A program made the translations under genes and the position numbers. Below the pieces are notes generated by a model. It saw only the letters and a program-made list of their open reading frames with translations. It was not told where the DNA came from and made no database searches. Positions 1 to 35,990 of a DNA stretch of 36,212 bases are shown one piece after another; position 1 is the stretch's first letter; every line of letters starts with the position of its first letter. Origin of the DNA: Octopus sinensis (lineage: Eukaryota); contig NW_021826221.1 of the NCBI RefSeq assembly GCF_006345805.1, positions 1 through 36,212 of the forward strand, read 5' to 3'.

Positions 1-144
1 TCCTTCCTTCCTTCCTTCCTTCCTTCCTTCCTTCCTTCCTTCCTTCCTTCCTTCCATCCATCCATCCATCCATCCATCCATCCATCCATCCATCCATCCA
101 TCCATCCATCCATCCATCCATCCATCCATCCATCCATCCATCCA
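1..144. repeat. Compound tetranucleotide microsatellite (TCCT)13-(TCCA)23, truncated by the window start
   Basis: Read directly: TCCT units 1-52, TCCA units 53-144; ends 28 nt before the exon at 173. Confidence 0.97.
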
Positions 145-172
145 GTTTGATGTTTACCTTTCTCATCTGCAG

Positions 173-341
173 GTGCTGGTTCATTTGGTCGTGTTGTTTT
201 AGTGCGTCACAAAGACACCAAAGAATATTATGCACTGAAAATGATGTCTATTGCTGCCGTTGTGCGGTTGAAACAAACTGAACACGTTAAAAGCGAACGT
301 GAAATCCTAGAATCCATTCACCATCCATTCATTGTGAACAT
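173..341 (+). CDS. PRKX: PRKX/Pka-C3-like protein kinase, internal coding exon (169 bp; Gly-rich loop, VAIK-type lysine, alphaC helix)
   Basis: CAG acceptor ending at 172, GTAAGT donor at 342. Phase-1 translation (G)[55 protein letters not shown](M) contains the GxGxFG, ALK and alphaC Glu motifs of AGC kinases. The frame joins the exon at 23206. Not in the ORF track because it has no upstream start. Confidence 0.95.
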
Positions 342-898
342 GTAAGTTTTCCTTCAATTTTTGTTTTCTTTCAAAATTTTGTGCCTTTGTTTCTCTTCTA
401 AAACAATTTTAGCATCCATTTGGATGGTTTGGATTTTCTTTTTTTTTTTTGCAGATGTGTAAATCTGTTTCCCATTCCTTGATCTACTTTTGAAGGTTAC
501 TGCTTACTTCTGGCTTTGTGGTGTAGATAGTAACACACAATTTTCTTCTTTTCTTCCCCTCTTCCACAAGTTTCAGTTCCACATTGACCCAATACCTGTT
601 ACCAATAGTTGGCTAATCTGTGGAATTAAATGAATCTGCTGAGACATTCATTGCAATATGATTCGAACTCAGGATTTATTAACTGGCTTTTATGTTTTAC
701 ATATTCAAACATCTCAATGTGGATATTTGCATATTGTTGGAGTAATTACTTATTTGGTCTTGAATTGGCAAAATTCTTAGATGGGTAGAATACCTCATAG
801 AATTTGTTCTAAATCTGTATTCTGAGTTCAAACCCTACTTAGGTCATCTTTATCTTTCATCCTTTTCACTCAATAAAAAAAAAAAATACGAATCCATA

Positions 899-1319
899 GG
901 CGCAGGAGTGGCTGTGTGGTAAGTAGCTTGCTAACCAAGCACATGGTTCCGGGTTCAGTCCCACTGCGTGGCATCTTGGGCAAGTGTCTTCTGCTATAGC
1001 CCCGCTGGACCAATGCCTTGTGAGTGGATTTGGTAGACGGAAACTGAAAGAAGCCTGTCGTATATTGTATGTATATATGTATGTGTGTGTGTGTGTGTGT
1101 TTGTGTATCTGTTTTGTCCCCCTAGCATGCTTGACAACCGATGCTGGTGTGTTTTACGTCCCCGTCACTTAGTGGTTCGGCAAAAGAGACCGATAGAATA
1201 GTACTGGGCTTACAAAGAATAAGTCCCGGGGTCGATTTGCTCGACTAAAGCCGGTGCTCCAGCATGGCCGCAGTCAAATGACTGAAACAAGTAAAAGAGT
1301 AAAAAAAGAGTAAGAGTAA
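899..1319 (+). mobile_element. tRNA-derived SINE, young full-length copy with an internal TA/TG microsatellite
   Basis: A-box-like TGGCTGTGTGG (909-919), B-box-like GGTTCAGTCCC (952-962), CORE-like TCTTGGGCAAGTG (974-986), (GAGTAAAA)-type tail, CpG-rich. Possible short TSD AATCCA (891-896 / 1318-1323). Homologous older copies lie at 6160-6317, 18140-18502 and 21800-21900. Confidence 0.85.
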
Positions 1320-4768: not shown

Positions 4769-5647
4769 TTAATGCAAAAACTGTCCTATGATAATCCTTT
4801 GTGGTTGAGCATGTTAATGCACTTGGAACACCTATTACAGGGCTCCAAACAACCATAATAGTGACATATGCATAGCAATTATAATATAAACTTGTGTTTA
4901 TATTTATTTCTCATATATGTATATCAGCTGATGATGATGATGGTGATGTAAATGAATAAAAGTTCCAGGAAGGTTGCAGTGAAATATTTTAATAATGATA
5001 GAAAAATTAAGTCAAAGGTAAAGGAAATGTGGTGTATTTTGCTTAAAGTCAGATTGAAAATGGCTGGGTTTTCCTAAGGAAATGAGAAAACACTGCTTAA
5101 ATCCTGGTTTTTTGTTTAGCACTAGAGAGTCAATCTTTGTCTCTGTTTAAGAAGGGAGTGACTGCATTCCTTTATCGTCTTTTATATATCAACTGTAAAA
5201 GAATGTGATTAAATCTTTTCTTGCTTGCTAGACAACATCACACAAAAAGACAAGATAAAAGGATTTAAGTGGTATTATATGTTACCTCGGGAAAATTCAA
5301 ACATTCTATGTCTGTACATAAAGAAAAAAATTCCTTCTAATTTTTCTTCTATTATTGATATATAATATAATATGTGTGCATTAGCTTGTATGTGTGTGTA
5401 TATTTATGTGAAGGTGAGGATATGGATGTACATCTATATATATATGTATATGTTAGTGTATATATGTGTGAATGGATTTACTTATGCAAGTAAGATAAAT
5501 ATCCCTAGAGAAAGAAATGTAGGGTCAAAAGTCAAAGTTCAGTAACCCTCCAAACATACAGTAACATTTGTTCCAACAAACAATTTCACATCCTACATAT
5601 ACATACATGTATGTATGCATACATATATGTGTGCGTTATGTGTGGTG

Positions 5648-5681
<34 letters not shown>

Positions 5682-5749
5682 TATATATGTGTTGTGTGTG
5701 TGTATGTATGTATATATATATATATTATATATATATATATATATAATAA

Positions 5750-5888
5750 TCATCATCAATCATCATCATTATAACGTCTGTTTTCCATGCTGGCATGGGT
5801 TTAGACTGTTTTACTGGGACTCTTAAGCCGGAGTGCTGCACCAGGCTCCAGTCTGAGTTGGCTGGGTGCCCTTCCTAATGCCAACCAA
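5750..5888 (-). mobile_element. Short 5'-truncated RTE LINE 3' tail
   Basis: (CAT)n followed by AACGTCTGTTTTCCATGCTGGCATGGG and GCACCAGGCTCCAGTCTG, homologous to the 3' end of the LINE at 11078-12590. Confidence 0.75.
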
Positions 5889-6159
5889 GTGGGTAGTGGG
5901 GGCCTTTTACTTGTCTCGCACATTCTCATTGTTTTTAATATTCTCTTTTCCATGTTTGCATTGGTCAGGTGGAAGTTATTGAGGCAGGTGTTCCATGGTC
6001 AGTCCTCAACTGTTTCTAAGCAGGTTTTCATTTCCCTCATGGGTGGGTATGTTTCAAAGGAAGACTGGAACCTAATTGCACTGCTTCTATTACAGTAACT
6101 GCCATGTGATGTCAGAGCAAGAAGACACACAAATACATGCTTGCTCAGGCATACATTCG

Positions 6160-6317
6160 TATTAGGCTTCCATCAGTTTCCATCTACCAAATCTACACAC
6201 AAAGCTTTGGTCAGCTTGTGACTGTAGTGAGAGATACTTGTCCAAAGTGACACGCACTGGAACTGAACTTGAAGCCAAATTCTTGGGAAGCAAGCTTTTT
6301 CACCACACACCCATACC
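6160..6317 (-). mobile_element. tRNA-SINE 5' half, decayed (same family as 899-1319)
   Basis: Reverse complement aligns by eye to 899-1060 (GGTAGATGGAAACTGATGGAAGCC, TTGGACAAGT). Confidence 0.7.
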
Positions 6318-6326
6318 TAAGCATAT

Positions 6327-6778
6327 ATCATCATCATCATCATTATCATCATCATCGTTGTCGTTTAATGTCTGCTTTCCATGCTAGCATGGGATGGATG
6401 ATTTGACTGAGGATTGGCGAACCAGATGGCTGCACCAGGCTCCAGTCCTGATCTGGCAGAGTTTCTACAGCTGGATGCCCTTCCTAACACCAACCACTCC
6501 GAGAGTGTAGTGGGTGTTTTTACGTGCCACCAGCATGAGAGCCAGTCAGGCGGTACTGGCAACAGCCATACTCAAATGGTGTTTTTTACATGTCACCTGC
6601 ATGGAAGCCAGTCCAGCGGCACTAGCAACGACCTCGCTCAAATGGATTTTCATGGGCCAGTAAGGTGATGTTGGTAACGATCACACTCGAATGGTGCCCT
6701 TTTACGTGCCATCGGCATGGAAGCCAGTTTGTTGCTCTGACAACGATCATGCTCGGATGGTGCTCTTAGCGCTCTACT
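6327..6778 (-). mobile_element. 5'-truncated RTE LINE 3' UTR copy with tandem hairpin units
   Basis: (CAT)n tail, CCATGCTAGCATGG palindrome, GGATGCCCTTCCTAACACCAACC block, then several ~65-bp units containing TTTTACGTGCCA; homologous to 11078-11600. Confidence 0.85.
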
Positions 6779-8802: not shown

Positions 8803-8924
8803 TGTCTCAAATTTAGGTTAAATCAGTGTTTCTCAAAGGGAGGCCTATGGGACGGTCGGACAAGTTGTTTTGAGAAAATTTGGTTTAAATGTTTGTTGAC
8901 AGGGGTGGGGTGCGTTTTGCTTGT

Positions 8925-8994
<70 letters not shown>

Positions 8995-9017
8995 TTAGTT
9001 AACTATATACATATCTA

Positions 9018-9087
<70 letters not shown>

Positions 9088-9140
9088 TATATATATACCT
9101 ATATATATACACACATATACATACACACATATACATATAC

Positions 9141-9208
<68 letters not shown>

Positions 9209-9246
9209 TTAGTTAGCTATATACATATCTATCTATCTATATATAT
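8925..9246. repeat. Compound TA/CA/TATC microsatellite block with a duplicated unique core
   Basis: Read directly; core TTTAGTTA(A/G)CTATATACATATCTAT at about 8994 and 9208. Confidence 0.9.
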
Positions 9247-9610: not shown

Positions 9611-10182
9611 CGAGATCTCTGGAGATGTGCTGTGACTGCAAAGACCCGGGATGCTTCCGGCACCAGTTCCGCATACCCCCTGCCCATTCAAAGTACCTTG
9701 GATCCCGGAACATATCGCTGTGCTTGAGGAGACCTGTTGAGTCAAGTGCATGTACATGAACATCGAAACAAATATCAATGGAAATAGTAGTTGTGATACC
9801 TGTGCCGGTGGCACATAAAAGGCACCATCTGAACGTGGCCGATGCCAGCGCCGCCTTGTACGGCTTCTGTGCCGGTGGCACATAAAAAGCACCATCCGAA
9901 CGTGGCCGATGCCAGCACCGCCTTGGCTAGCTTCCGTGCCGGTGGCACGTTAAAAGCACCAACCGATTGTGGCCGATGCCAGACCCCCCCGTGGCACCTG
10001 TGCAGGTGGCATGTAAAAAGCACCCACTACACTCGCGGAGTGGTTGGCGTTATGAAGGGCATCCAGCTGTAGAAACACTGCCAGATCAGACTGGAGCCTG
10101 GTGCAGCCCCTGGCTTCCCAGACCCCAGTCGAACCGTCCAACCCGTGCTAGCATGGAGAACGGACGTTAAACGATGATGATG
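9611..10182 (+). mobile_element. 5'-truncated RTE LINE (last codons of the ORF, 3' UTR tandem array, (GAT)n tail) with 7-bp TSD
   Basis: Begins in RDLWRCAVTAKTR, homologous to RDLWKYAVLEKTR at the end of the ORF in the 11078-12590 copy. TSD ATATAAC at 9604-9610 and 10183-10189. Tandem units start at 9801, 9868, 9935 and 9999. Confidence 0.88.
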
Positions 10183-10267
10183 ATATAACATTTGGTATTC
10201 AAATAATGGTAACCATTAGTACCCTAACTGTGAAGCTACAACAATAAAAAGATTAGCATAACACTCC

Positions 10268-11077: not shown

Positions 11078-12590
11078 CATCATCATCATCATCATCATCG
11101 TTTAACGTCTGTTTTCCATGCTAGCATGGGTTGGACGATTTTGACTGAGGGCTGGCAAACCAGATGGCTGCACCAGGCTCCAGTCTTGATCTGGCAGAGT
11201 TTCTACAGCTGGATGCCCTTCCTAACACCAACCACTCCAAGAGTGTAGTGGGTGCTTTTACGTGCCACAGGCACAGGCGCCAGTCAGTCAGTACTGGCAA
11301 CGACCTTGCTCGAATCCTTTTACACATGCCACCAGCACAGGTGCCAGTGAAGCGACATTGGTAACGATCACGTTCAAATGGTGCCCTTTTACGTGCCACG
11401 GATACGGAAGCCAGTTGGCTGCTCTGGCAATGATCATGCTCGGATTAGCACCCTACTACCACATGCACAAGTGCCAGTAAGGCGACGCTGGTAACGATCA
11501 TACTCAAATGGTGCCCTTTTATGTTCCACTGGCACGGAAGCCGGTTAGCCACTCTGTCAATGATCACACTCGTATAGTGCTCTTTGCACCCTGCTAGCAT
11601 GGATGCCAGTCATCGAATTGATTTTGATTTGATTTTGATTTCACTTGCCTCAACAGGTGTTTGCAAGCAGAGTTTAGTGACCAAAGAAGGAAAAGGTACG
11701 CATAAGTGGGCTGGTTACGCTTCTGGCATAGGCCACAGGTTATGGTCTCATTTGGCTTGCCGGGTCTTCTCAAGCACAGCATATTTCCAAAGGTCTCGGT
11801 CACTAGTCATTTCCTTGGTGAGGCCTAATGTTTGAAGGTCGTGCTTCACCACTTCATCCCAGGTCTTCCTGGGTCTACCTCTTCCACAGGGTGTGGCACT
11901 TTTTCACACAACTCTCCTCATCTATTCTCACCACATGACCATACCAGCGCAGTCATCTCTCTTGCACACCACAACTAATGCTTCTTAGGTCCAACTTTTC
12001 TCTCAAGGTACTTACACTCTGTCAAGTTTGCACACTGACATTACACATCCATCGGATCATACTGGCTTCATTCCTTACGAGCTTATGCATGTCCTCAGCA
12101 GTCACAGCCCATGTTTCACTGCCCTGTAGCATGGCTGTTCATACACATGCGTCATACAGTCTACCTTTTACTCTAAGCAAGAGGCCCTTTGTCACCAGCA
12201 GAGGTAAGAGCTCTCTGAATTTTGCCCTGGTTATTCTCATTGTAGCAGCTACACTCTCAGAGCATCCACCCCTGCTACTGACTTGGTCACCTAGGTAACG
12301 GAAGCTGTCAACTACTTCTAGTTTTTCTCCCTGGAATGTGGCAAAAGTTGGTCTCTGCATATTTTCAATGTTTATTGCTCCCGAGCATCTGCCACATACA
12401 AAAACTATCTTCCTAGTTAGCCTTCCTTTGATATTGCTGCACATCTTATGTGTCCATAGTTTACACTGGGTACATCTTATAGTTTCTACCTATGCCTCTA
12501 CTACAGATTGAGCAGGGCCATCTACCTGAAGGGACTTGTGGTTTGCCTACCGCTAACTACTTGTCTCTAAGTAACCCAAATTTGACTTTC
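11078..12590 (-). mobile_element. RTE-clade LINE, 5'-truncated: RT C-terminal part with inserted PHD finger, 3' UTR tandem array, (GAT)n tail
   Basis: Minus strand: ...LEVVDSFRYLGD..GGCSES...KFRELLPLL..GRLYDACV...RGRPRKTWDEVVKHDL..DRDLWKYAVLEKTRQAK* (stop at 11748-11750). Frameshifted. Candidate TSD TCTGGAA at 11069-11075 and 12593-12599. Confidence 0.9.
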
Positions 12591-13524: not shown

Positions 13525-14452
13525 ATACAATAACACAAACGTTCTCTTCTTTCAGTGCCCAGCCACATTGCCTAAAGTTAATCACCTTGCCAAACAGGTT
13601 TACTTAATGCAGTGGATATTTGTAGACACACAATCATACTGGGAATGTGGTTGTTGGGGATGACAAGTATTTAAATGCAAGTATTTACCAAATGCTTGCT
13701 CTGCTACCACTGACTACTACTGACACCAACATGTCAACGAAAACCAGGACCATCAAATGACACAAGAGGTTTCCATTGGGGTGGTTGGCAACTATTGTCA
13801 TGTAAGACAGACAGTCTATCGTTGCACAGGTGGCAGGCTAGAAGAGGGGACAACAACCCCCCACAATCTGCCATTAAAATCAATTTCTTTTTGTTGTTCA
13901 TTTTAAAAAATTGTTCCTATTATTATTATTATTATTATTATTATAGAATTATTATTATAAAATTGTATATATTTTTATGGCTTTCCTGTATTCTATTCAT
14001 ACAATGTTCCTGATCTTATAGTATAGAGAGCTCAGCAGTCGGAAGTCCAATAACCTCTTTCTGCTTTGTTAGCTTATTGAATCTGCTTTGCTTGGATTCA
14101 GGCTGTCTTTTTTCTGTTTATGCCCAGATGTCTATCTTTCTGTCTGTCTGTTTTTTTTTTTGTTTGCTTCCAGGGACAGCTGTTTATCTGCCAAAACCCC
14201 AGTTTATATATTCGTCTGCTTGCCTGTCTGTCAGTCTATATGTCTGTCTCTCTGACTGTGTGTTTGCCTTTCAGCTTATCAATTTATCCGTCTTTCCTAC
14301 CCTGTTCTCTCCTCTCAATCAGTATTAAAAAATGTGAAAGTTTAATTACATTGAACAACAACAGCTCCTAGCTTCTTGTTAATTATCTTCAGGTGTTACT
14401 GCAAAACATTGCTACCTGCTATTGACTGAAATAGTCGGTGACCGACATCATC

Positions 14453-15107
14453 CTATCATCAACATCATCATCATCATTGCACCAACTTTCTCCATTTACT
14501 TGCTCCTCCTACTCCTCTTGTACTTTAAAACTAATTTTTGCCACTCACTGCACAGACTATTCCCACTCTGATAATCAAATAAATGAATTTCAAGAACTAT
14601 TCTGGGATTCAACATAAATCGTTTCTTGTGTTTCTAAACGGAAATACGAAGGACATAACTGAAAGATAATGAATAAGAAGTGATCAGTTGATGATATTGA
14701 ACTCCCAAACCTATGTCTTTTGCAGTTGTTCAAACTAAATGTTGACTATTAAATAAACCACCAAGGAAATTTACTTAGAAAGGCCATTTTCATGAAAACC
14801 AGTTGTCAAGTTATTGTTAACATATTCATTTAATGCTAACATATTTGAAAATAAGGATGCTGGTATATGGATGAGTACAGCTCCTTAAAGTGTGTACGGT
14901 CAAGGACAGCTGCTTAAAGAAGTGCTGAGCTCTAATTGTGGAAGGAACCTGTGGAAAGGGTGTACTCAGGATGACACAGGACAAAGTGGTGAGAAAGGAT
15001 CTTCAAGTGAGTGATAAAATTAGTTTTAAAGTACAAGAGGAGTAGGAGGAGCAAGTAAATAGAGAAAGTTGGTGCAATGATGATGCTGATGTTGATGATG
15101 ATGATAG
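14453..15107. repeat. Spaced inverted repeat, arms about 95-100 bp (14453-14549 and 15006-15107), spacer about 455 bp
   Basis: CATCATTGCACCAACTTTCTC(C/T)ATTTACTTGCTCCTCCTACTCCTCTTGTACTTTAAAACTAATTTT matches the reverse complement of 15014-15085 with one mismatch. Confidence 0.92.
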
Positions 15108-15264: not shown

Positions 15265-15560
15265 TTGCAGGTGCTGGTGCTGCATAAAATGCACTTGTGC
15301 TGGTGCCATGTAGAACGCACTTGTGCTAGTACCACATAAAATGTACCTGTGCCAATGGAATGTAAAAAAACACACAGTACACTTTGTAAGGTAGTTGGGT
15401 GTTAGGAAGGGCATCCAGCCATAGAAACCATGCCAAATCAGACATTTGGGGCCTAGTGTAGTCCTCTGGCTTGCCAGCATGGGCTGGAGAGTTTGACAGG
15501 GGCTTGCCTGTGCCTGTCAAACTGTCCAGCCCATGCCAGCATGGAAAATGATGATGATGA
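15265..15560 (+). mobile_element. Older RTE 3' UTR copy with 26-bp tandem units and an internal fold-back duplication
   Basis: Units start at 15271, 15297, 15323 and 15349; GTTAGGAAGGGCATCCAGCC block; CCATGCCAGCATGGAAAA(TGA)n tail. Confidence 0.8.
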
Positions 15561-18139: not shown

Positions 18140-18502
18140 ATCTTTTATTTGTTTCAGTCCTTGTACTGCAGCCATGCTGGGAGTACCACCTTCTAGGGTT
18201 TAGTCAAACGAATTGACCCCAGTCCCTATTTCTTAAGTGAGCCTCTTTTGGCAAACAGCTAAGTTATGAAGGCATAAGCAAACCATCACCAAATATCAAG
18301 CAATGATGAGGGGCAGACACAAATGCACATGCATGGATAAATGGCAGGCTTCCACACAATTCCCCTCTATCAAATTCACTCACAAGGTATTGGTTGGCCC
18401 AGAGCTATAGCAGAAGTCATTTACCCAAAGTGCCATGCAGTGGGACTGAACCCAGAACTGCATGGTTGCAAAGTGAGCTTCTTAACCACACAGCCATGCC
18501 TC
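18140..18502 (-). mobile_element. tRNA-SINE, old full-length copy (family of 899-1319)
   Basis: Reverse complement starts GAGGCATGGCTGTGTGGTTAAGAAGCTCAC...GGGTTCAGTCCCACTGC and ends CAGCATGGCTGCAGTACAAGGACTGAAACAAATAAAAG; CpG-depleted relative to the 899 copy. Confidence 0.8.
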
Positions 18503-21790: not shown

Positions 21791-21923
21791 ATGCACATAT
21801 TTTGAGGGCCGATCAAAGCTTTGTGAGTGGTTTTGGTAGATGGAAACTGGAAAGAGCACATCGTGTGTGTGTGTGTGGTGTGTGTGAGTGTGTGTGTGTT
21901 GCTGTCTCTTTTCTCTTGACATA

Positions 21924-23000: not shown

Positions 23001-23205
23001 TACATGTTACCATTCTTACTTGAACCAAACAATAAAACCTACATGCAAACAAAGGCACATACAGCTCCTCTCCTTTGAACATACACACACATCGGGCTCT
23101 TCTTCTTTGGACAAAAAATAAAATACACACATGCACAAACACACTCTCTCTTTCTCTCTCTCTCACACACACACACATTCATATATGTCACATTTTATTT
23201 TTCAG

Positions 23206-23469
23206 GTCATGGTCTTACCACGATCAGAATTTTCTTTATATGCTACTGGAATATGTACCTGGTGGTGAACTGTTCTCTTATCTGCGAAAGTCTGGGTTTT
23301 TCAGCAGTGCTTGGGCTAACTTTTTTGCCTGTGAACTGATCTCAGCCATAGACTATCTCCATAGTAAATTAATTGTCTACAGAGATTTGAAACCAGAAAA
23401 TCTCCTCTTAGATTATGAAGGCCATATGAAAATTACTGATTTTGGTTTTGCTAAGAGGCTTCGTGACAG
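23206..23469 (+). CDS. PRKX: PRKX/Pka-C3-like kinase, internal coding exon (264 bp; hinge, catalytic loop, DFG)
   Basis: TTTTCAG acceptor ending at 23205, GTAAGT donor at 23470. Encodes [30 protein letters not shown]...[30 protein letters not shown](R). Confidence 0.97.
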
Positions 23470-23699
23470 GTAAGTAAATTTTTTGTCCTCTGTGTATGTA
23501 TGTGTTTGTGTATGTATATGATTGATCTGTGTGCGAGTACTTCTTTTTTATAGTTCATTGTTTTGATATTGATAGAAAAAAAATGCAGTTGCACACAATT
23601 TTTGAAATTTACTTTGGTCTTACCAAACTGAGAAAAATTGAGTGTTAATTTAACACAGTTAATGTGGTTATATTCAGAGTTGTTTTAAAAACTAATCCT

Positions 23700-27149: not shown

Positions 27150-28050
27150 ATATATGCAAAAGGAGCGTAACATTTTTATTCATTCAAATTGCACATATGT
27201 GTTGGTTGAGTAACTCTTCTTCTATTGTAATTCTTCTTCCTGTTCTCTTTTGTGGATTCTAAGCAGAAGCAAATTGCCATTATTGAGTTTTTGACAAGGG
27301 AGGTGTGCGAGCTGTCCAATACCCACAGAAGACTACAGGTTGTGTGCACAGATGATGCCATTGACAAGAGCAATGTACACAGATGGGAAATCAGCATCGA
27401 AGACAGACCACACAACGGGAGACCATCAGTTGCGGCGGCCAATGATAAGCACTGCCAGCAAGGGGATGAGTTTCAATCCATGGGCTGGCCGTACAACTGA
27501 ACTGTGGTCACATGGTGTTGCAGAAAGGGGTGGAAAGACTGGGTCTTCAAAAGTGGGTACCTCTGCAGTTGACACACAATTTTTCATGAGCCAGCAATTG
27601 GCACTAAAAGTCATGGTGACTATTTTTTGGAATAATAAGAGTGTCATTGCTCTTGATTTTCTAGAATGTGGCTGTACTGTGAACAGTGAATGGTACATTG
27701 AGATTAAAAGGACCCACAGAAACTGTTAGGGGGAAGAAACTGAACAAGGATCTGAAAATGATTCACATTCACCATGATTTGGCAACAAATCATGCAATCA
27801 GCAATTTGGATTTGGGCCGGTCAGTGCTCCCCTGTCCACTGTACAGCCAGGATCTGTTGCTCTCCAATATCTGCCTTTAGTCCAATGAAGGACAGTCATA
27901 AGGGGCAACAAAGCTGAGGTGAAAGTGGTTGTGAAGAAATGAGTGCAAGAGGGTACACCTGATTTTTCTTAAAGCAGATTTCATGGTCGAGTTCAATAAT
28001 GGTGCAAATGCATTGCTTGTGGTGCAAAGAAGAGTTTTTCTACCAACATG
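27150..28050 (+). mobile_element. mariner relic, old and deleted, ends approximate
   Basis: MDSKQKQIAIIEFLTRE..RRLQVVC.DDAIDKSNVHRW..DRPHNGRP; KWVPLQLT; KVMVTIFW..DFLE.G.TVNSEWY; PCPLYSQDL (HPPYSPDL). Confidence 0.75.
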
Positions 28051-28205
28051 TGCAGTTTGAACAACCTGCATCAGTTAATATAAAAAAAGTTATGCTCAGT
28101 TTTGCATTACATTCAGGACAACTCTCCTACATGATCATGCATATACACACACAGACGCACACACACACACACACACACCACACACACACACACCACACAC
28201 ACATA

Positions 28206-29734
28206 TTGGTTTGGCAAGTAAGTAATTTCGTTTTTTGTAAATAGATAGAATTATGATTTTTTGAATGACTTTTGTCAATGTTATGATTTTTTTTCTTTTG
28301 ACATTTGATAGCCATTACTTTTAGCTTACTTTAGAAGCAAAATGCACGTAATTTCGTTTACAGCTGTTAGTTTTACAGCGTCAATTTTAACATGGAGTGC
28401 AAAAACGAACATTTTCACCATATTTTGCTTTTTTACTTCTGTAAAGGCAAGAAGGCTGCTGAGGCTCACAAAGAGATATGTGAAGTTTATGGTGTTGATT
28501 GCTTAACAGAACGTACATGGTCAGAAATGGTTTAAAAAATCCTGTTCTGGAGATTTTTCACTCAAAGATGACCAATGTTCTGGTCGACCTACGCAAGTTC
28601 ATGATGAGCGAATCAAAGCCATAATTGAATCTGATTGTCATGTGACTGTGCAAAAGATTGCAGAGAGGTTAAATGTTTCACACACAACAATTGAAAATCA
28701 CTTAAAATGTTGTTGTATTTCGGAATGGTCATTTTGCCAGTTTAGCCAATAAAAAGAAACTCACTATATATTTGGTGTTACTTTGCTTCAGTGTTATTTA
28801 TTTTTTACATTAAATTTAATCTTATTAAAAAATAAATAACACTGAAGCAAAGTAACACCAAATATATAGTGCGTGTGTTTTTATTGGCTAAACTGGCAAA
28901 ATGACCATTCCGAAATACAAAAATATCTGTTTCAACACACGACTTCACATAAAAAATCTTGCACAACAAATATATAAACGTAACACTTAAAATGTCTTTG
29001 ACTCATTAAGAAGCTTGATATTTGGGTTCCACATGAATTGAAAGAGGTTCCCTTGATACAATGAATTAATATTTGCAATATGCATCTCCAATGCAAGGAA
29101 ATCAACCTTCTTTTGAAACAAATCATCACTGGTGATAAAAAATGGATTGTCTACAATGTCAATCGAAAACAATCATGGTCCAAGCATAATGGACCAGCAG
29201 AAACCGCATCAAAAGCTGAATTGCATTAAAAAAAAAGGTCATACTATCAATTTGGTGGGATTACAAAGGTGCTGTGTATTTTGAGCTGCTTCCAAGGAAC
29301 CAAACTATCAAATCAGATGTTTACTGTCAAGCAATCAAAGAAAAACAGCCAGAATTGGCAAATCATAAAGGAATTGTGTTCCACCATGACAACGCTAGAC
29401 CACACATGTCTTTGCTAACTTGTAGAAAATTATTGGAACTTGGTTGGGAACAAGTAATGTCACATCCACCATATAGCCTGACCTCACACCATCAGTTTAC
29501 CATTTATTTCAAAGTTTGCAAAATTCTTTGGATGGTAAAACTTTCAATAATGATGATGACCTGAAATCACACTTGCTTCACTTTTTGGCTGATAAGGTCC
29601 AGAAGTTTTATGAGTGCGGCGTCAGGAAGTTTCCAGAAAGATGGCAAAAGGTCATTGAACAAAATGGAAAATATAGAATTTGTATGAAAAAAAAAAGAAT
29701 TATTTCACAAAACCGAAATTACTTACCAACCCAT
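28206..29734 (+). mobile_element. mariner (DD34D) element, near full length but decayed, interrupted by a palindromic insertion
   Basis: TA TSDs at 28204-05 and 29735-36; TIR core AAGTAATTTCG(G)TTTT. ATG at 28392 gives MECKNEHFHHILLFYF..; WVPHEL; ITGDKKWIVY; HHDNARPH; HPPYS. Length minus insertion is about 1244 bp. Confidence 0.92.
28711..28983. mobile_element. 273-bp insertion (208-bp near-perfect palindrome plus 63-bp tail) with 12-bp TSD; class unresolved, Penelope-like fold-back suspected
   Basis: TSD CACTTAAAATGT at 28699-28710 and 28984-28995. Arms 28713-28807 and 28826-28920 are 92/95 complementary. Removing the insert restores the mariner reading IENHLKC...KKLDIWVPHEL. Confidence 0.85.
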
Positions 29735-30108
29735 TATATGTCCGGTCATAGAGTGACCAATGGTTTCACATCCATAAAGCACTTAGCTTTAGAGACAACT
29801 CATCAGACTCCAATGGTCACAGGCATATAACCTCTCTTCAAACTGGAGGTAGAAAACCGTTATGGTCAATTAATTTGTAAATAAAAGAATAATAAACATG
29901 GTCTGAGCCTTAAACAGGACAAGTTATTACCCTTAGACCGGTCCGTTGGAAGAGTGTTTATATGCCGGCAACAATTGGAGTCTAAGCGCATTATGGAGGC
30001 ATTAGTCACTCTGTGATTGGACATTTATACATATTTAACTTCATGTTAGTACATTACTGCACTAACTTTTCGAGTGTCCTTTTTCGGATATCTGATCCTG
30101 TGATGATA

Positions 30109-31387
30109 CAAGGGGCGTTCAATAAGTAATGCCCCTGATCCACTTGCAGTTATTTGATCTAGCTGAAATTTTGCATGTGCAATATAGAATACGTGGCAAA
30201 TTACAGCTCTGGACTAATTGCGGTTTCTGATTTACAGGTGTTTGAACTGAGTCAAGTATGAAATGGAGCCTGTTGAGTGTCGAGCAGTGATCCGGTTTTT
30301 GTATTTGAAAGGACGCACACCATGGAAGACCTTTGATGAAATGAAAGTAACTTATGGTGATGATGCCCCATCATATGACCTTGTAAAACGCTGGCATCGT
30401 GAATTTAAACATGGTCGGAACTCTGTGGAAACAGCTCCCAGATCTGGTCGCCCCCCTTCTGCCATTGATGAGACATCTGTCCGTCAAGTTGAGGCTGCCA
30501 TTTTGGAAGATCAACGCATAACTATTCGCGAAATAGCCCATGAGGTCAAGATTAGTACCGGGTCTGTGGAAACTATCATTCATGACCATTTGCATATGCA
30601 AAAGGTGTCTGCCAGATGGATTCCCAAGTTGCTCACATCTTTCCAGAAGCAAGAACGTGCCGATTGCTCGAGGATGAATTTGGAGATGTGCCAAGAAGAT
30701 GAGTCAAAATTTTTCAAAAGACTGATTACACAGGATGAAACCTGGGTCCATCACTATGATCCAGAGACCAAAGCCCAGTCAATGCAGTGGAAGCACCGTG
30801 ACTCCCCTCCTCCAAAGAAGGCAAGGGTGCAGCCCTCCGCTGGCAAGGTCATGCTCACAGTCTTCTGGGACCAGGACGGAGTAGTGATGACAGATTTCCT
30901 GGCAAATGGTGTCACAATTACAGGAGTCTATTATGCTTCACTTTTGAGGAAATTAAGAGAAGCTATCAAAATCAAGGGCAGGGCAAGATCAGCAAAGGCA
31001 TCCTCCTCCTGCAGGACAACGCTCTGGTCCACAACTCGCGTGTCGCCAGATCAGAAGCACAGGCGTGCGGCTATGAACTCCTCCCCCATGCCCCCTACTC
31101 TTCTGACCTTGCACCCTCTGATTTTCACCTCTTCCCAGCCATGAAGTTGTTTTTGAAAGGAAATCGTTTCCCAGATGATGCAGCCTTTATTTCTGAAGTC
31201 ACATCGTGGTTGGAGGACCAAGCTGGGGTCTTCTACAGAAACGGTCTTCAGAGCTGCATCAAACAATGGGAGAAATGCGTAACTCTGGGTGGTTCCTATG
31301 TAGAAAAAGACTAATAACTGTTCCAAGTTTCGTTGCTCTACTGCTATGGGAAGTGGGTCAGGGGCATTACTTATTGAACGCCCCTCG
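30109..31387 (+). mobile_element. mariner (DD34D) element, full length 1279 bp, young
   Basis: TA TSDs at 30107-08 and 31388-89. TIRs C(A/G)AGGGGCGTTCAATAAGTAATGCCCCTGA match 29/30 and extend to 37 bp with 2 mismatches. Confidence 0.97.
30263..31314 (+). pseudogene. mariner transposase (350 aa if repaired) broken by one 1-bp deletion near 30977-30981
   Basis: Frame 1: MEPVECRAVIRFLYLKG...SARWIPKLL...TQDETWVHHYDPE...AIKIK. The shifted frame continues GKISKGILLLQDNALVH...HAPYSSDLAPSDFHLFP...EKD* (TAA 31312-31314), with 34 residues between the 2nd and 3rd Asp. Confidence 0.93.
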
Positions 31388-31763
31388 TATATGAATATGC
31401 TTCATCATGAAGTCAGTACAGTTTCTATTACTTTTTCTTTTACTTGTCTTTTTTTCCTCTTTAGTAAAATGTATAGCTTGAAACATTAGATCCTCTTGTA
31501 GTCCTTTCATCGGTGCATTTATTTTCATTGTCCATATTCTTTTAATCTTGTTTTGTTTCATATTTCTACCTTTCCCACCACTCTCTTTTTCTTATCCAAC
31601 TTCATATATTGTTTAGCTCCTCCTTACTTTATTTGTGTAGTTTTTGTCTACTCATGTCCTTATGCTTATATAGAACAAATAACTGCTACTTCATGGAGTG
31701 ACCAGGGTGACTACAAATATGTCTGTAAATTTATATGTGCTTTTCTATATATATATATATGAA

Positions 31764-31830
31764 TCATCATCAGCGTTTAATGTCCGCTTTCCGTGCTGGC
31801 ATGGGTTGGACGGTTTGACTGAGGACTGGT
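31764..31830 (-). mobile_element. Very short RTE 3' tail
   Basis: ATCATCATCAGCGTTTAATGTCCGCTTTCCGTGCTGGCATGGGTTGGACGGTTTGACTGAGG. Confidence 0.75.
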
Positions 31831-33644: not shown

Positions 33645-33835
33645 AAGGCAAAAGATCAGAAATTTGCAGGAAGAGAACAGTTGATTATATCAACTGCAGT
33701 ACTTGAATAATACTTTATTTTTATCGACTCTGCAAGGATAGAAAGCAAAGTTTATCTCAGTGAGATGTGAATTTAGAATGTAAAAAGATGTATCAAATAA
33801 TGCAAAGCATTTTGTGCAATATTCCTCTGATTCTG
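33645..33835 (-). mobile_element. Decayed SINE-like repeat; possible related fragment at about 760-878 (+)
   Basis: Reverse complement has TTCTAAATTCAC..ACTTTGCTTTCTATCCTT..GTCGATAAAAATAAAGTA, loosely matching TTCTGAGTTCAAAC..TCTTTCATCCTTTT at about 822-866. Confidence 0.4.
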
Positions 33836-34530: not shown

Positions 34531-34728
<198 letters not shown>

Positions 34729-35188: not shown

Positions 35189-35990
35189 ACATTACCCAAA
35201 AGTAAGCAGAAATGTTCTCTATGGGACAAGCCCATTGTAGTTCAGGCTCCCACCACCAGAATCCACTTGATGCAACCCTCAGACATCACTATGCTGACTG
35301 CAGTCATTGAGTGTAGTCCTAATGCCACGTGGTGCATCTGCTTTGCAGTGCTTCTTCCCTGTTCATTGAGTTTTGTGATGGTTGAAACAAAGGAACAGCA
35401 TACTTCCATGAAATTCTGTTTCCTGCTGGAGAAATCAGCAGCCAAAACAATTGTCATGCTTCTATCAGCTTACAAGGACACAGCCATGAGCAAAACACAA
35501 GTTTATGGGTGGTTTTCATGCTTTAGGAATGGTCACTTGTTCAGGGCATCTATCAACGTCCTGAACGAATGTTAACAACATGAAAACTAGTGAACTGATC
35601 TTAGAGGATCATTGCCAACCAATTGACATATTTGTTCACATTGGTTACTGCCAATGAATTTTGAGCGAGGAATTGCAAATGAAAAGAGTTGCATAAAAAG
35701 TTGTGCCGCGTTTGCTCACAGAAGATCAAAAGCAGTCACAACTGAATGCATGTTGTGAACTGAAAGAATAGACCTTTTTCTGAAGGTCATCAAAAGTGAT
35801 AAAAGCTGGTGAAGAAAAAACAATTGAGGTGTTAAAAGGCATCATTTTGCAAGAGTTTCAACACTGCTTTGGTCAGTGGAAAACTAATTTGGGCTGATGC
35901 TTTGCTTCAAATGGAAAATACTTTGAAGGCAATGAAAGTGTAAACATGTAAAATAATATTGCAAAATTCTGGTTTCTTTTGGGTACCCCC

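What the first reader, a model, noticed from the sequence alone, without database searches (positions are those of the whole stretch)
28699..28995. Near-perfect 208-bp palindrome plus 63-bp tail inserted with a 12-bp TSD: an unusual mobile-DNA footprint
The empty site is provable because the insert interrupts a mariner ORF and CACTTAAAATGT is duplicated exactly. Arms are 95 bp (92/95; all three mismatches lie within one 6-nt patch) around an 18-nt loop that is itself palindromic (ATTAAATTTAAT). The inverted repeats are not terminal (63 bp lie outside on the right), there is no poly(A), and a 12-bp TSD fits none of the common MITE superfamilies. This argues for TPRT with fold-back duplication, as known for Penelope-like elements, or for an undescribed palindromic element. 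As RNA it is a 95-bp almost perfect hairpin (ADAR/Dicer substrate); as DNA, a cruciform.
Basis: partly seen in the sequence, partly recalled or inferred. Interest (0 to 1): 0.75.

Follow-up and report, generated by a model that had tools for sequence, protein, structure and literature searches.

The report
Head-to-head retroelement stub inside mariner
A 273-bp insert in a dead mariner transposon consists of two inverted copies of one ~175-nt sequence, one lacking its last ~61–63 nt; this matches the published insertion signature of Penelope-like retroelements, so it is probably an ordinary, tidy retroelement footprint and not a new kind of mobile DNA.

Summary
A 208-bp near-perfect palindrome (95-nt arms, 92/95 identical, 18-nt spacer) plus a 63-nt one-sided tail sits between two exact copies of CACTTAAAATGT. 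Removing 285 bp restores a mariner transposase reading that aligns without gaps to Mos1 across the junction. The insert is best read as two head-to-head copies of one ~175-nt unit:
- a direct copy (28809-28983);
- an inverted copy (28713-28807) lacking the unit's last ~61–63 nt and first 17 nt.

Six features match published descriptions of Penelope-like element (PLE) insertions:
- head-to-head inverted copies;
- a short palindrome at the inversion junction;
- an extension on one side only;
- no poly(A);
- no terminal inverted repeats;
- a short TSD.

For PLEs the protein nicks and extends both target strands, and reverse transcription starts at two alternative sites. L1-type twin priming fits poorly, because the inverted copy lies wholly within the region the direct copy covers.

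Not shown: any sequence link to a PLE. No other copy was found in the window or in any searchable collection, there is no hammerhead motif, and the tail is longer than the usual 30-40 bp. I give the PLE-type reading about 0.5 and any retroelement/TPRT origin about 0.7. Moderate-to-low interest; new member of a known kind.

The parts
28699..28710 (.). Left copy of the 12-bp target-site duplication CACTTAAAATGT
   Evidence: Exact 12-mer, present only at 28699 and 28984 in the window. It cannot be extended on either side.
28711..28807 (-). Inverted copy of the unit (strict arm 28713-28807). It lacks the unit's last ~61–63 nt and its first 17 nt. 28711-28712 (TG) are junction bases of uncertain origin.
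   Evidence: 92/95 identical to the reverse complement of 28826-28920.
28756..28761 (.). 6-nt patch holding all three arm-to-arm differences (partner patch 28872-28877)
   Evidence: Alignment. In the unit's sense the left copy reads GTGAGTTTC and the right copy GTGCGTGTG.
28808..28825 (.). 18-nt asymmetric spacer at the inversion junction. It contains the perfect palindrome ATTAAATTTAAT (28809-28820), read here as the 5' end of the direct unit.
   Evidence: Only 14 non-(TA)n 12-nt palindromes occur in 36 kb, so about 0.003 are expected in this spacer.
28809..28983 (+). Direct copy of the ~175-nt unit: 5' palindrome, right arm 28826-28920, then the tail
   Evidence: Inferred from the anatomy. 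The sense is inferred from the outward-facing 3' ends.
28921..28983 (+). One-sided 'tail' (63 nt; 61 nt if the weaker outer pairing is counted), present only on the direct copy
   Evidence: No partner on the left side. No poly(A) or simple repeat at its end.
28901..28983 (+). ATG-initiated frame (MTIPKYKNICFNTRLHIKNLAQQIYKRN) that starts inside the arm and stays open to the last base of the element. Possibly the start of the parent element's ORF.
   Evidence: Chance probability is 0.09-0.14, so this is weak, consistent evidence only.
28984..28995 (.). Right copy of the 12-bp target-site duplication
28206..29735 (+). Host element: a degenerate mariner (about 1245 bp without the insert) with TIR-like ends. 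The insert lies just after the second HTH of the transposase.
   Evidence: Pfam HTH_48 and Transposase_1. Gapless Mos1 alignment across the join. Ends (approximate).

Best explanation
The insert is a dead-on-arrival retroelement insertion made by target-primed reverse transcription on both strands of a staggered (12-nt) break.

Two cDNA copies of the same short 3'-terminal template of about 175 nt were made, one from each nicked target strand, and joined head to head. One reverse transcription started at the template's far 3' site, giving the direct copy 28809-28983 with the tail. The other started ~61–63 nt further in, giving the inverted copy 28713-28807 without the tail. The junction lies at the template's 5' end, which carries a 12-nt palindrome.

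This is the insertion signature described for endonuclease-containing Penelope-like elements: an inverted pseudo-LTR next to a direct pseudo-LTR, with an optional one-sided tail. The unit is therefore most likely a PLE pseudo-LTR or a non-autonomous PLE-dependent RNA.

**Shown:** the anatomy, the TSD and the empty site.
**Inferred:** the RNA intermediate, the two start sites and the PLE parentage.

The insert has no evident function of its own. Its consequence is a 95-bp hairpin in the intron RNA of a PRKX-like kinase gene.
For: 1. There is a clean 12-bp TSD, and the empty site restores colinearity with Mos1.
2. There is no poly(A) and there are no terminal inverted repeats (best 9/20). That excludes cut-and-paste families and L1-type tails.
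3. The two copies face head to head, and only one carries the extension. Craig et al. [quoted passage not shown] Arkhipova et al. 2013 (PMC3846280) describe a direct pLTR plus an inverted pLTR that is 37 bp shorter, a 31-bp tail on one of the inverted pLTRs, TSDs of 8-10 bp, pLTRs of 181-218 bp, palindromes at the inverted junction and at the 5' end of the pLTR, and solo pLTR structures flanked by TSDs.
4. Frangieh et al. 2024 (PMC11167929) showed that a PLE protein cleaves and extends both target strands, that RT starts at two internal sites, and that the tail is the sequence between them. This predicts exactly an inverted pair that differs by a one-sided tail.
5. A 12-nt perfect palindrome sits at the junction, with about 0.003 expected by chance.
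6. An ATG frame starts in the arm and stays open through the tail, as in PLE pLTRs that hold the first codons of the ORF. This is weak support, p about 0.1.
7. The host genome shares dispersed repeats with Octopus, and cephalopods are known to harbour PLEs.
Against: - No sequence-level link to any PLE was found.
- There is no second copy of the arm or tail in the 36-kb window.
- Metagenome, prokaryotic-genome and viral contig collections gave 0 hits for an arm 22-mer, and the metagenome and genome collections gave 0 for a tail 20-mer. These collections hold little animal DNA.
- The open frame across the unit gave 0 hits among 1.84 billion protein representatives.
- No RT or GIY-YIG remnant is evident in the window.
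- There is no hammerhead ribozyme, which canonical PLE pLTRs usually carry. Rfam found none at E<=10 and there is no CUGANGA...GAAA core in the insert. Naiad/Chlamys PLEs lack it too, but Naiads are reported as ancient remnants in cephalopods, whereas this insertion looks young.
- The tail is 61-63 nt, not the usual 30-40.
- The direct copy is only ~175 nt, so there is no ORF to classify.
- With a single copy, the two-start-site model cannot be separated from a snap-back of one cDNA.
Confidence: 0.5

Rival explanations
1. Retroposition by another TPRT machine (a LINE of the CR1/L2/RTE type, or a SINE-like partner). One cDNA was primed at the tail end, reached the 5' end of a short or broken template, and then snapped back or switched template and copied itself for 95 nt before joining the other target end.
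For: - A variable-length TSD of 12 bp is typical of LINE-mediated events, and many non-L1 LINEs lack poly(A).
- A LINE fragment is present in the window (12139-12480).
- A shared pivot for both copies follows automatically from a snap-back.
- Self-priming has been invoked for inverted junctions with palindromes (PMC3846280).
Against: - In L1 twin priming the two cDNAs cover adjacent parts of one RNA and overlap by a median of only 12 bp (PMC12016303). Here the inverted copy lies wholly (95/95 nt) within the region covered by the direct copy.
- No terminal base pairing that could prime a snap-back is visible in the 18-nt spacer.
- The unit has no similarity to the LINE fragment in the window.
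- One-sided tails are described as not seen with non-LTR elements (PMC8557442).
Confidence: 0.2
2. The whole 273-bp sequence is one copy of an undescribed non-autonomous element family whose body is a long hairpin with an asymmetric 3' extension. It would have moved as a unit, leaving a 12-bp TSD.
For: - The anatomy alone cannot exclude it.
- The hairpin is extremely stable.
- Sub-threshold Rfam matches are to hairpin miRNA precursor families (MIR7504, MIR5380; my recollection is that these derive from MITEs). They reflect shape only.
Against: - There are no terminal inverted repeats (9/20), and a 12-bp TSD fits no cut-and-paste superfamily (established knowledge).
- Nearly identical arms (92/95, differences confined to one patch) point to arms created at or shortly before this insertion, not inherited through a family.
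- No second copy was found anywhere that could be searched.
Confidence: 0.15
3. This is not a transposition. A staggered double-strand break in the mariner was repaired by capturing foreign DNA, with fold-back (template-switch) synthesis creating the inverted duplication. Alternatively, a simple 178-bp insertion was followed later by a local inverted duplication.
For: - Fold-back and template-switch synthesis at short palindromes is a known DNA-level route to inverted duplications (established knowledge).
- The 12-nt palindrome lies at the junction.
- The clustered 3-nt patch could be a template-switch scar.
Against: - No donor sequence lies within 36 kb.
- A later duplication would have to end exactly at the element/TSD boundary.
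- Templated repair insertions are usually tens of bases long and copied from nearby (established knowledge).
- The clean 12-bp duplication with an otherwise intact target is the hallmark of endonuclease-made staggered nicks.
Confidence: 0.1
4. Assembly or read artefact: a chimeric fold-back read.
For: Palindromic chimeras do occur in long-read data, and PLE-type inverted structures are known to trouble assemblies (PMC8557442).
Against: - The palindrome is short and internal.
- It is imperfect in a structured way: an asymmetric 18-nt spacer, a 3-nt patch and a one-sided tail.
- It is bounded by an exact TSD inside an otherwise colinear mariner. A fold-back artefact would not create a target-site duplication.
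Confidence: 0.03

Closest known systems
Penelope-like element insertions with an inverted pseudo-LTR and a one-sided 'tail' (for example Pen2a_Av of Adineta vaga, Penelope of Drosophila virilis, Poseidon PAc of Anolis)
   Same: - Head-to-head inverted copy directly next to the direct copy.
- Extension on one copy only.
- Palindrome at the inversion junction and at the 5' end of the pLTR.
- Unit length (~175 nt against 181-218 bp).
- Short TSD (12 against 8-10 bp).
- No poly(A).
- An ATG near the 3' end of the unit reads outward through the tail.
   Different: - No ORF (RT/GIY-YIG) lies between or next to the copies.
- The tail is 61-63 nt, not 30-40.
- No hammerhead motif.
- No detectable sequence similarity to any known PLE; none could be searched at the nucleotide level.
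L1 5'-inverted insertions (twin priming, Ostertag and Kazazian 2001)
   Same: Two cDNAs primed from the two target strands, an inverted 5' part, and a TSD in the 10-15 bp range.
   Different: - L1 events end in poly(A).
- In L1 events the inverted and direct cDNAs cover adjacent parts of one RNA, with a median 12-bp overlap. Here the inverted copy is wholly contained in the region covered by the direct copy, which gives a true palindrome.
MITEs and foldback (FB-type) DNA transposons
   Same: Short, non-coding, long inverted repeats, stable hairpin.
   Different: - Their inverted repeats are terminal. Here 63 nt lie outside on one side and the true termini do not match (9/20).
- Their TSDs are of fixed, family-specific length (2-11 bp), not 12.
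DNA-level fold-back or template-switch inverted duplications
   Same: An inverted duplication pivoting on a short palindrome, and clustered substitutions.
   Different: Those copy adjacent local sequence and make no target-site duplication. Here foreign DNA is inserted with a clean 12-bp TSD.

Membership tests
Penelope-like elements (EN+ PLE) | ORF with PLE-clade reverse transcriptase and GIY-YIG endonuclease, or sequence identity of the fragment to such an element | not testable with these tools
   The insert is non-coding. No YxDD or GIY-YIG segment was seen in the window's six frames. No eukaryotic genome or TE library was available. The arm and tail probes gave 0 hits, as did the peptide probe.
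Penelope-like elements (EN+ PLE) | Inverted 5'-truncated copy or pLTR directly adjacent, head to head, to the direct copy | tested here: met
   Arms 28713-28807 and 28826-28920 are 92/95 identical and 18 nt apart. Feature as described.
Penelope-like elements (EN+ PLE) | Optional short extension ('tail', usually 30-40 bp) on one end only | tested here: met
   A 61-63-nt extension at 28921-28983 is present only on the right copy. It is longer than the published range.
Penelope-like elements (EN+ PLE) | Palindrome at the inverted junction or at the 5' end of the pLTR | tested here: met
   ATTAAATTTAAT at 28809-28820. About 0.003 are expected by chance in the spacer. Feature as described.
Penelope-like elements (EN+ PLE) | Hammerhead ribozyme motif in the pLTR (canonical clades; absent from Naiad/Chlamys) | tested here: not met
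   No Rfam hammerhead match at E<=10 in 27500-30500, and no CUGANGA...GAAA core in the insert. The feature is not universal in PLEs, so this lowers membership but does not exclude it.
Penelope-like elements (EN+ PLE) | Short TSD of variable length and no poly(A) | tested here: met
   12-bp TSD. The 3' end reads ...ATATATAAACGTAA.
Penelope-like elements (EN+ PLE) | The 3' end of the pLTR and the tail encode the first residues of the element's ORF | tested here: inconclusive
   A frame from the ATG at 28901 stays open to 28983. Chance probability is 0.09-0.14. The peptide is too short for the homology tool.
L1-type twin-priming insertion | Poly(A) tail at the 3' end | tested here: not met
   No A-run lies next to the right TSD.
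L1-type twin-priming insertion | Inverted and direct cDNAs cover adjacent template segments with little overlap | tested here: not met
   The inverted copy overlaps the direct copy over all 95 nt, against a median 12-bp overlap in L1.
MITE / cut-and-paste DNA transposon | Terminal inverted repeats at the exact ends of the insert | tested here: not met
   Best match of the first 20 nt to the reverse complement of the last 20 nt is 9/20, allowing offsets up to 5.
MITE / cut-and-paste DNA transposon | TSD length characteristic of a superfamily (TA, TTAA, 3, 5, 8, 9-11 bp ...) | tested here: not met
   The TSD is exactly 12 bp and cannot be extended or shortened. Comparison with superfamily TSD lengths rests on established knowledge.
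Helitron | Insertion between A and T without a TSD, 5'-TC ... CTRR-3' ends, and a hairpin near the 3' end | tested here: not met
   A 12-bp TSD is present. The ends are TGTTG... and ...CGTAA, and the hairpin is 63 nt from the 3' end.

The most novel reading that the evidence does not exclude
The unit belongs to a recently active, hammerhead-less PLE lineage, or to a pLTR-only non-autonomous partner, in a cephalopod-like genome. Its double-strand priming would routinely deposit near-perfect ~100-bp hairpins in introns. That would make it a systematic source of long dsRNA substrates for ADAR editing or small-RNA pathways. Alternatively, it is the first copy of a truly new palindromic retroposon family with an asymmetric 3' extension.
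Probability: 0.12. Interest if true: 0.55.

Novelty: new member of a known kind. Interest (0 to 1): 0.3.

Why it matters
If the PLE reading is right, this is a compact natural example of the double-strand priming and two-start-site mechanism recently shown in vitro for a PLE. Both products, the tail and the TSD are preserved in 285 bp, and the empty site is provable. Such minimal insertions could help define RT start sites and endonuclease stagger for a poorly understood retroelement class. They could also improve TE annotation, since pipelines often miscall these structures. Locally, the insert places a 95-bp perfect-stem hairpin in an intron of a PRKX-like kinase gene. That might be a dsRNA substrate, but this was not tested. 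On present evidence it is an ordinary, non-functional TE footprint.

Tried and rejected
1. **Other copies in the window.** blastn of the insert against all 36 kb gave nothing significant. The best hit was 36 nt at 78%, E = 0.009, at 5556-5591.
2. **Exact-pattern scans.** The arm 22-mer gave 0 hits in the metagenome, prokaryotic-genome and viral contig collections. The tail 20-mer gave 0 hits in the metagenome and genome collections. Those two caps are now exhausted, and these collections hold little animal DNA.
3. **Spurious-ORF probe.** I used the 58-aa open frame across the unit to look for other copies among 1.84 billion protein representatives: 0 hits.
4. **Finding the locus in public assemblies.** The neighbouring 293-aa mariner ORF is not on record. 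The kinase exon has no hit above 74%, so the source species is not in the collection.
5. **Related genomic DNA.** L001 is an ENA contig that shares only the mariner. L002 is from Octopus bimaculoides and shares several dispersed repeats. Neither has a significant match to the insert.
6. **Rfam.** Only sub-threshold matches to long-hairpin miRNA precursor families, reflecting shape and not homology. Nothing in the whole window reaches a gathering score. No hammerhead was found.
7. **Putative N-terminal peptide.** I did not pad it to get round the limit.
8. **PLE supplement.** The supplement of Craig et al. 2021, which holds curated PLE sequences, is not held as text.
9. **Microhomology at the left junction.** 4 of 6 outer positions match, which is not significant in AT-rich DNA.
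10. **Readings rejected.** LTR or solo-LTR (no TG...CA ends, wrong TSD), Helitron, DIRS (these make no TSD) and FB elements.

Full report
**1. Observation.** The feature is present as described.
- The inverted repeat spans 28707-28807 and 28826-28926, 96/101 complementary, with an 18-nt spacer.
- The strict arms are 28713-28807 and 28826-28920, 92/95 identical. All three differences fall in one 6-nt patch (28756, 28758, 28761).
- The spacer CATTAAATTTAATCTTAT contains a perfect 12-nt palindrome (28809-28820). Its centre is 2 nt off the axis of the large palindrome.
- A 63-nt extension (28921-28983) follows the right arm only.
- CACTTAAAATGT flanks the whole insert and occurs nowhere else in the window.
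- Predicted hairpin energy is -141.6 kcal/mol as RNA and -101.3 kcal/mol as DNA, with z about -22 against dinucleotide shuffles.

**2. Empty site and host.**
- The flanks belong to a degenerate mariner at about 28206-29735 (Pfam HTH_48 and Transposase_1; TIR-like ends).
- Joining 28710 to 28996 gives ...TTIENHLKCL*LIKKLDIWVPHEL.... This aligns without a gap to Mos1 transposase across the junction (E = 1.8e-44), and 55 tblastn HSPs from other mariner proteins cross it.
- Isolated exact 12-mer pairs are not rare in this window (about 7). The argument therefore rests on the duplication coinciding with the exact interruption point of a colinear protein alignment. On that basis the insertion and its 12-bp TSD are secure.

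**3. Context.**
- The window is TE-rich animal DNA with 37% GC. It holds at least three further mariner copies or relics, SINE-like repeats with internal 66-67-nt tandem units, a LINE fragment and many microsatellites.
- Three exons of a PRKX-like protein kinase lie on the + strand at 151-342, about 23100-23470 and about 34590-34728. They match consecutive parts of the Pkinase profile. The mariner and its insert are therefore intronic.
- Several dispersed repeats are shared at 73-87% identity with an Octopus bimaculoides locus. This suggests a cephalopod-like host, but the species itself is not in the searchable collections.

**4. Re-reading the anatomy.**
- The insert is most economically described as two copies of one ~175-nt unit placed head to head, not as 'a palindrome plus a tail'.
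- The direct copy is 28809-28983. It begins with the 12-nt palindrome and ends with the tail.
- The inverted copy is 28713-28807. It lacks the unit's last ~61–63 nt and its first 17 nt.
- One base (C, 28808) at the inner junction and two bases (TG, 28711-28712) at the outer left junction are unassigned.
- The true termini of the insert are not inverted repeats (best 9/20). There is no poly(A) or simple-repeat tail.
- An ATG at 28901, inside the arm, opens a frame that runs through the whole tail to the last base of the element. This would happen by chance in 9-14% of simulated sequences, so it is only weakly informative.

**5. Search for relatives.** Every route available was negative.
- No second copy in the window.
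- No hit for the arm probe in the metagenome, prokaryotic-genome and viral contig collections. No hit for the tail probe in the metagenome and genome collections.
- No protein-level relative of the open frame across the unit among 1.84 billion representatives.
- No significant match in 56 kb of fetched related loci.
- No RT or GIY-YIG remnant is evident in the window.
- These collections contain little animal DNA, so the negatives say little about copy number in the source genome.

**6. Comparison with known systems.**
- *Penelope-like elements.* Published descriptions match the anatomy point by point.
  - Insertions are strongly 5'-truncated and often carry an inverted 5'-truncated copy immediately adjacent, forming inverted repeats. 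A 30-40-bp 'tail' is often present at one end only (PMC8557442).
  - In Adineta vaga, a direct pLTR of about 181-218 bp is preceded by an inverted pLTR that is 37 bp shorter. A 31-bp tail sits on one of the inverted pLTRs. TSDs are 8-10 bp. Palindromes occur at the inverted junction and at the 5' end of the pLTR. The pLTR holds the first codons of the ORF, and the tail extends them. Solo pLTR structures with TSDs also occur (PMC3846280).
  - In vitro, a PLE protein cleaves and extends both target strands, and RT starts at two internal sites. The tail is the sequence between those sites (PMC11167929). That mechanism predicts exactly two inverted copies that differ by a one-sided tail.
- *L1 twin priming.* It also primes from both strands. 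However, the two cDNAs cover adjacent parts of one RNA with a median overlap of 12 bp, and the insertion ends in poly(A) (PMC12016303). Here the inverted copy is wholly contained in the region covered by the direct copy, and there is no poly(A).
- *Other classes.* Cut-and-paste families, MITEs, foldback elements, Helitrons and LTR elements fail on termini and TSD.

**7. Mechanism proposed.**
- An endonuclease made nicks 12 nt apart on the two strands of the mariner target (shown indirectly by the TSD).
- Each 3'-OH primed reverse transcription of a copy of the same short RNA (inferred).
- One cDNA started at the distal site, the 3' end of the tail. The other started ~61–63 nt upstream (inferred from the one-sided tail).
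[quoted passage not shown] They were then joined there, either by a template jump of one RT onto the 3' end of the other cDNA or through the terminal palindrome (inferred; the spacer is asymmetric and one base is unassigned).
- A snap-back of a single cDNA would give the same product and cannot be excluded from one copy.
- The insertion looks young: the TSD copies are identical, and the arms are identical outside a single clustered patch.

**8. What argues against the PLE reading.**
- There is no sequence link to a PLE.
- There is no hammerhead motif, although canonical PLE pLTRs usually have one. The hammerhead-less Naiads are reported as ancient remnants in cephalopods.
- The tail is about twice the usual length.
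- The clustered 3-nt difference between the arms is unexplained.
- I therefore put PLE parentage at about 0.5 and a retroelement/TPRT origin of some kind at about 0.7.
- The remainder is divided between an undescribed palindromic element family (0.15), repair-mediated capture or later inverted duplication (0.1) and an artefact (0.03).

**9. Novelty and interest.**
- If PLE-derived, this is a new member of a known kind and a neat minimal specimen of a known signature, not a new class of mobile DNA.
- The hairpin's possible role as an intronic dsRNA substrate is speculation that the tools could not test.
- Interest is 0.3.
- The most novel reading not excluded is a recently active hammerhead-less PLE or pLTR-only partner that seeds introns with long perfect hairpins, or a truly new palindromic retroposon family. 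I give that about 0.12.

**10. Decisive test.** A BLAST of the arm and tail separately against the source genome would settle the matter. The discriminating observations are discrete 3' ends ~61–63 nt apart, variable 5' truncation and linkage to an RT/GIY-YIG ORF (PLE), against identical pivots in all copies (a palindromic family).

Noticed in passing
window 14447-14549 and 15006-15105: A second strong inverted repeat: 84 nt at 98% (103 nt at 93%), with arms 457-477 nt apart. The arms contain (ATC)n-like runs. No flanking direct repeat longer than 5 nt was found. It may be a foldback or MITE-like element, or two inverted SINE fragments.
   Followed up: partly
window 30106-31390: A near-complete mariner with 34-40-nt terminal inverted repeats (95% identical) and a 293-aa ORF that loses the frame before the end of the transposase. 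An ENA contig from an apparently unrelated organism (L001) carries a copy 91-95% identical at the DNA level and shares nothing else with the window, which suggests horizontal spread.
   Followed up: partly
window 151-342, ~23100-23470, ~34590-34728 (+): Three exons of a PRKX-like serine/threonine kinase separated by introns of about 23 kb and 11 kb. The best database identity for the middle exon is only about 74%, so neither this species nor a close relative is in the protein collection.
   Followed up: partly
window 5746-6659, 9800-10184, 11078-11596, 15345-15478, 31763-31829: A dispersed SINE-like repeat family (69-87% identity between copies) containing internal tandem units of 66-67 nt and 26 nt.
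   Followed up: no
window 896-1306; also short matches at 6165-6328, 18143-18179, 21817-21864, 33719-33813: Dispersed repeats shared at 69-87% identity with an Octopus bimaculoides chromosome locus (L002). This hints that the window comes from a cephalopod or another mollusc with related repeat families.
   Followed up: partly
window 12139-12480 (-): C-terminal fragment of a LINE-like ORF with a weak PHD-finger match (CTQCKLWTHKMC...). It has no similarity to the insert.
   Followed up: no
window 27340-27729 (+) and 35267-35575 (+): Two further mariner relics (Transposase_1 and HTH_48 fragments). The interrupted mariner is therefore one of at least four mariner-derived sequences in the 3' third of the window.
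   Followed up: no
window 28756-28761 vs 28872-28877: All three arm-to-arm differences are clustered: GTGAGTTTC in the left copy (unit sense) against GTGCGTGTG in the right copy. This looks like a single multi-nucleotide event or a template difference rather than independent point mutations.
   Followed up: partly
window 1-144 and 8924-9246: Long microsatellites: (TCCA)36 at the very start of the window and a ~320-bp imperfect (TA)n array. The (TA)n array accounts for most of the other 'long inverted repeats' reported.
   Followed up: no
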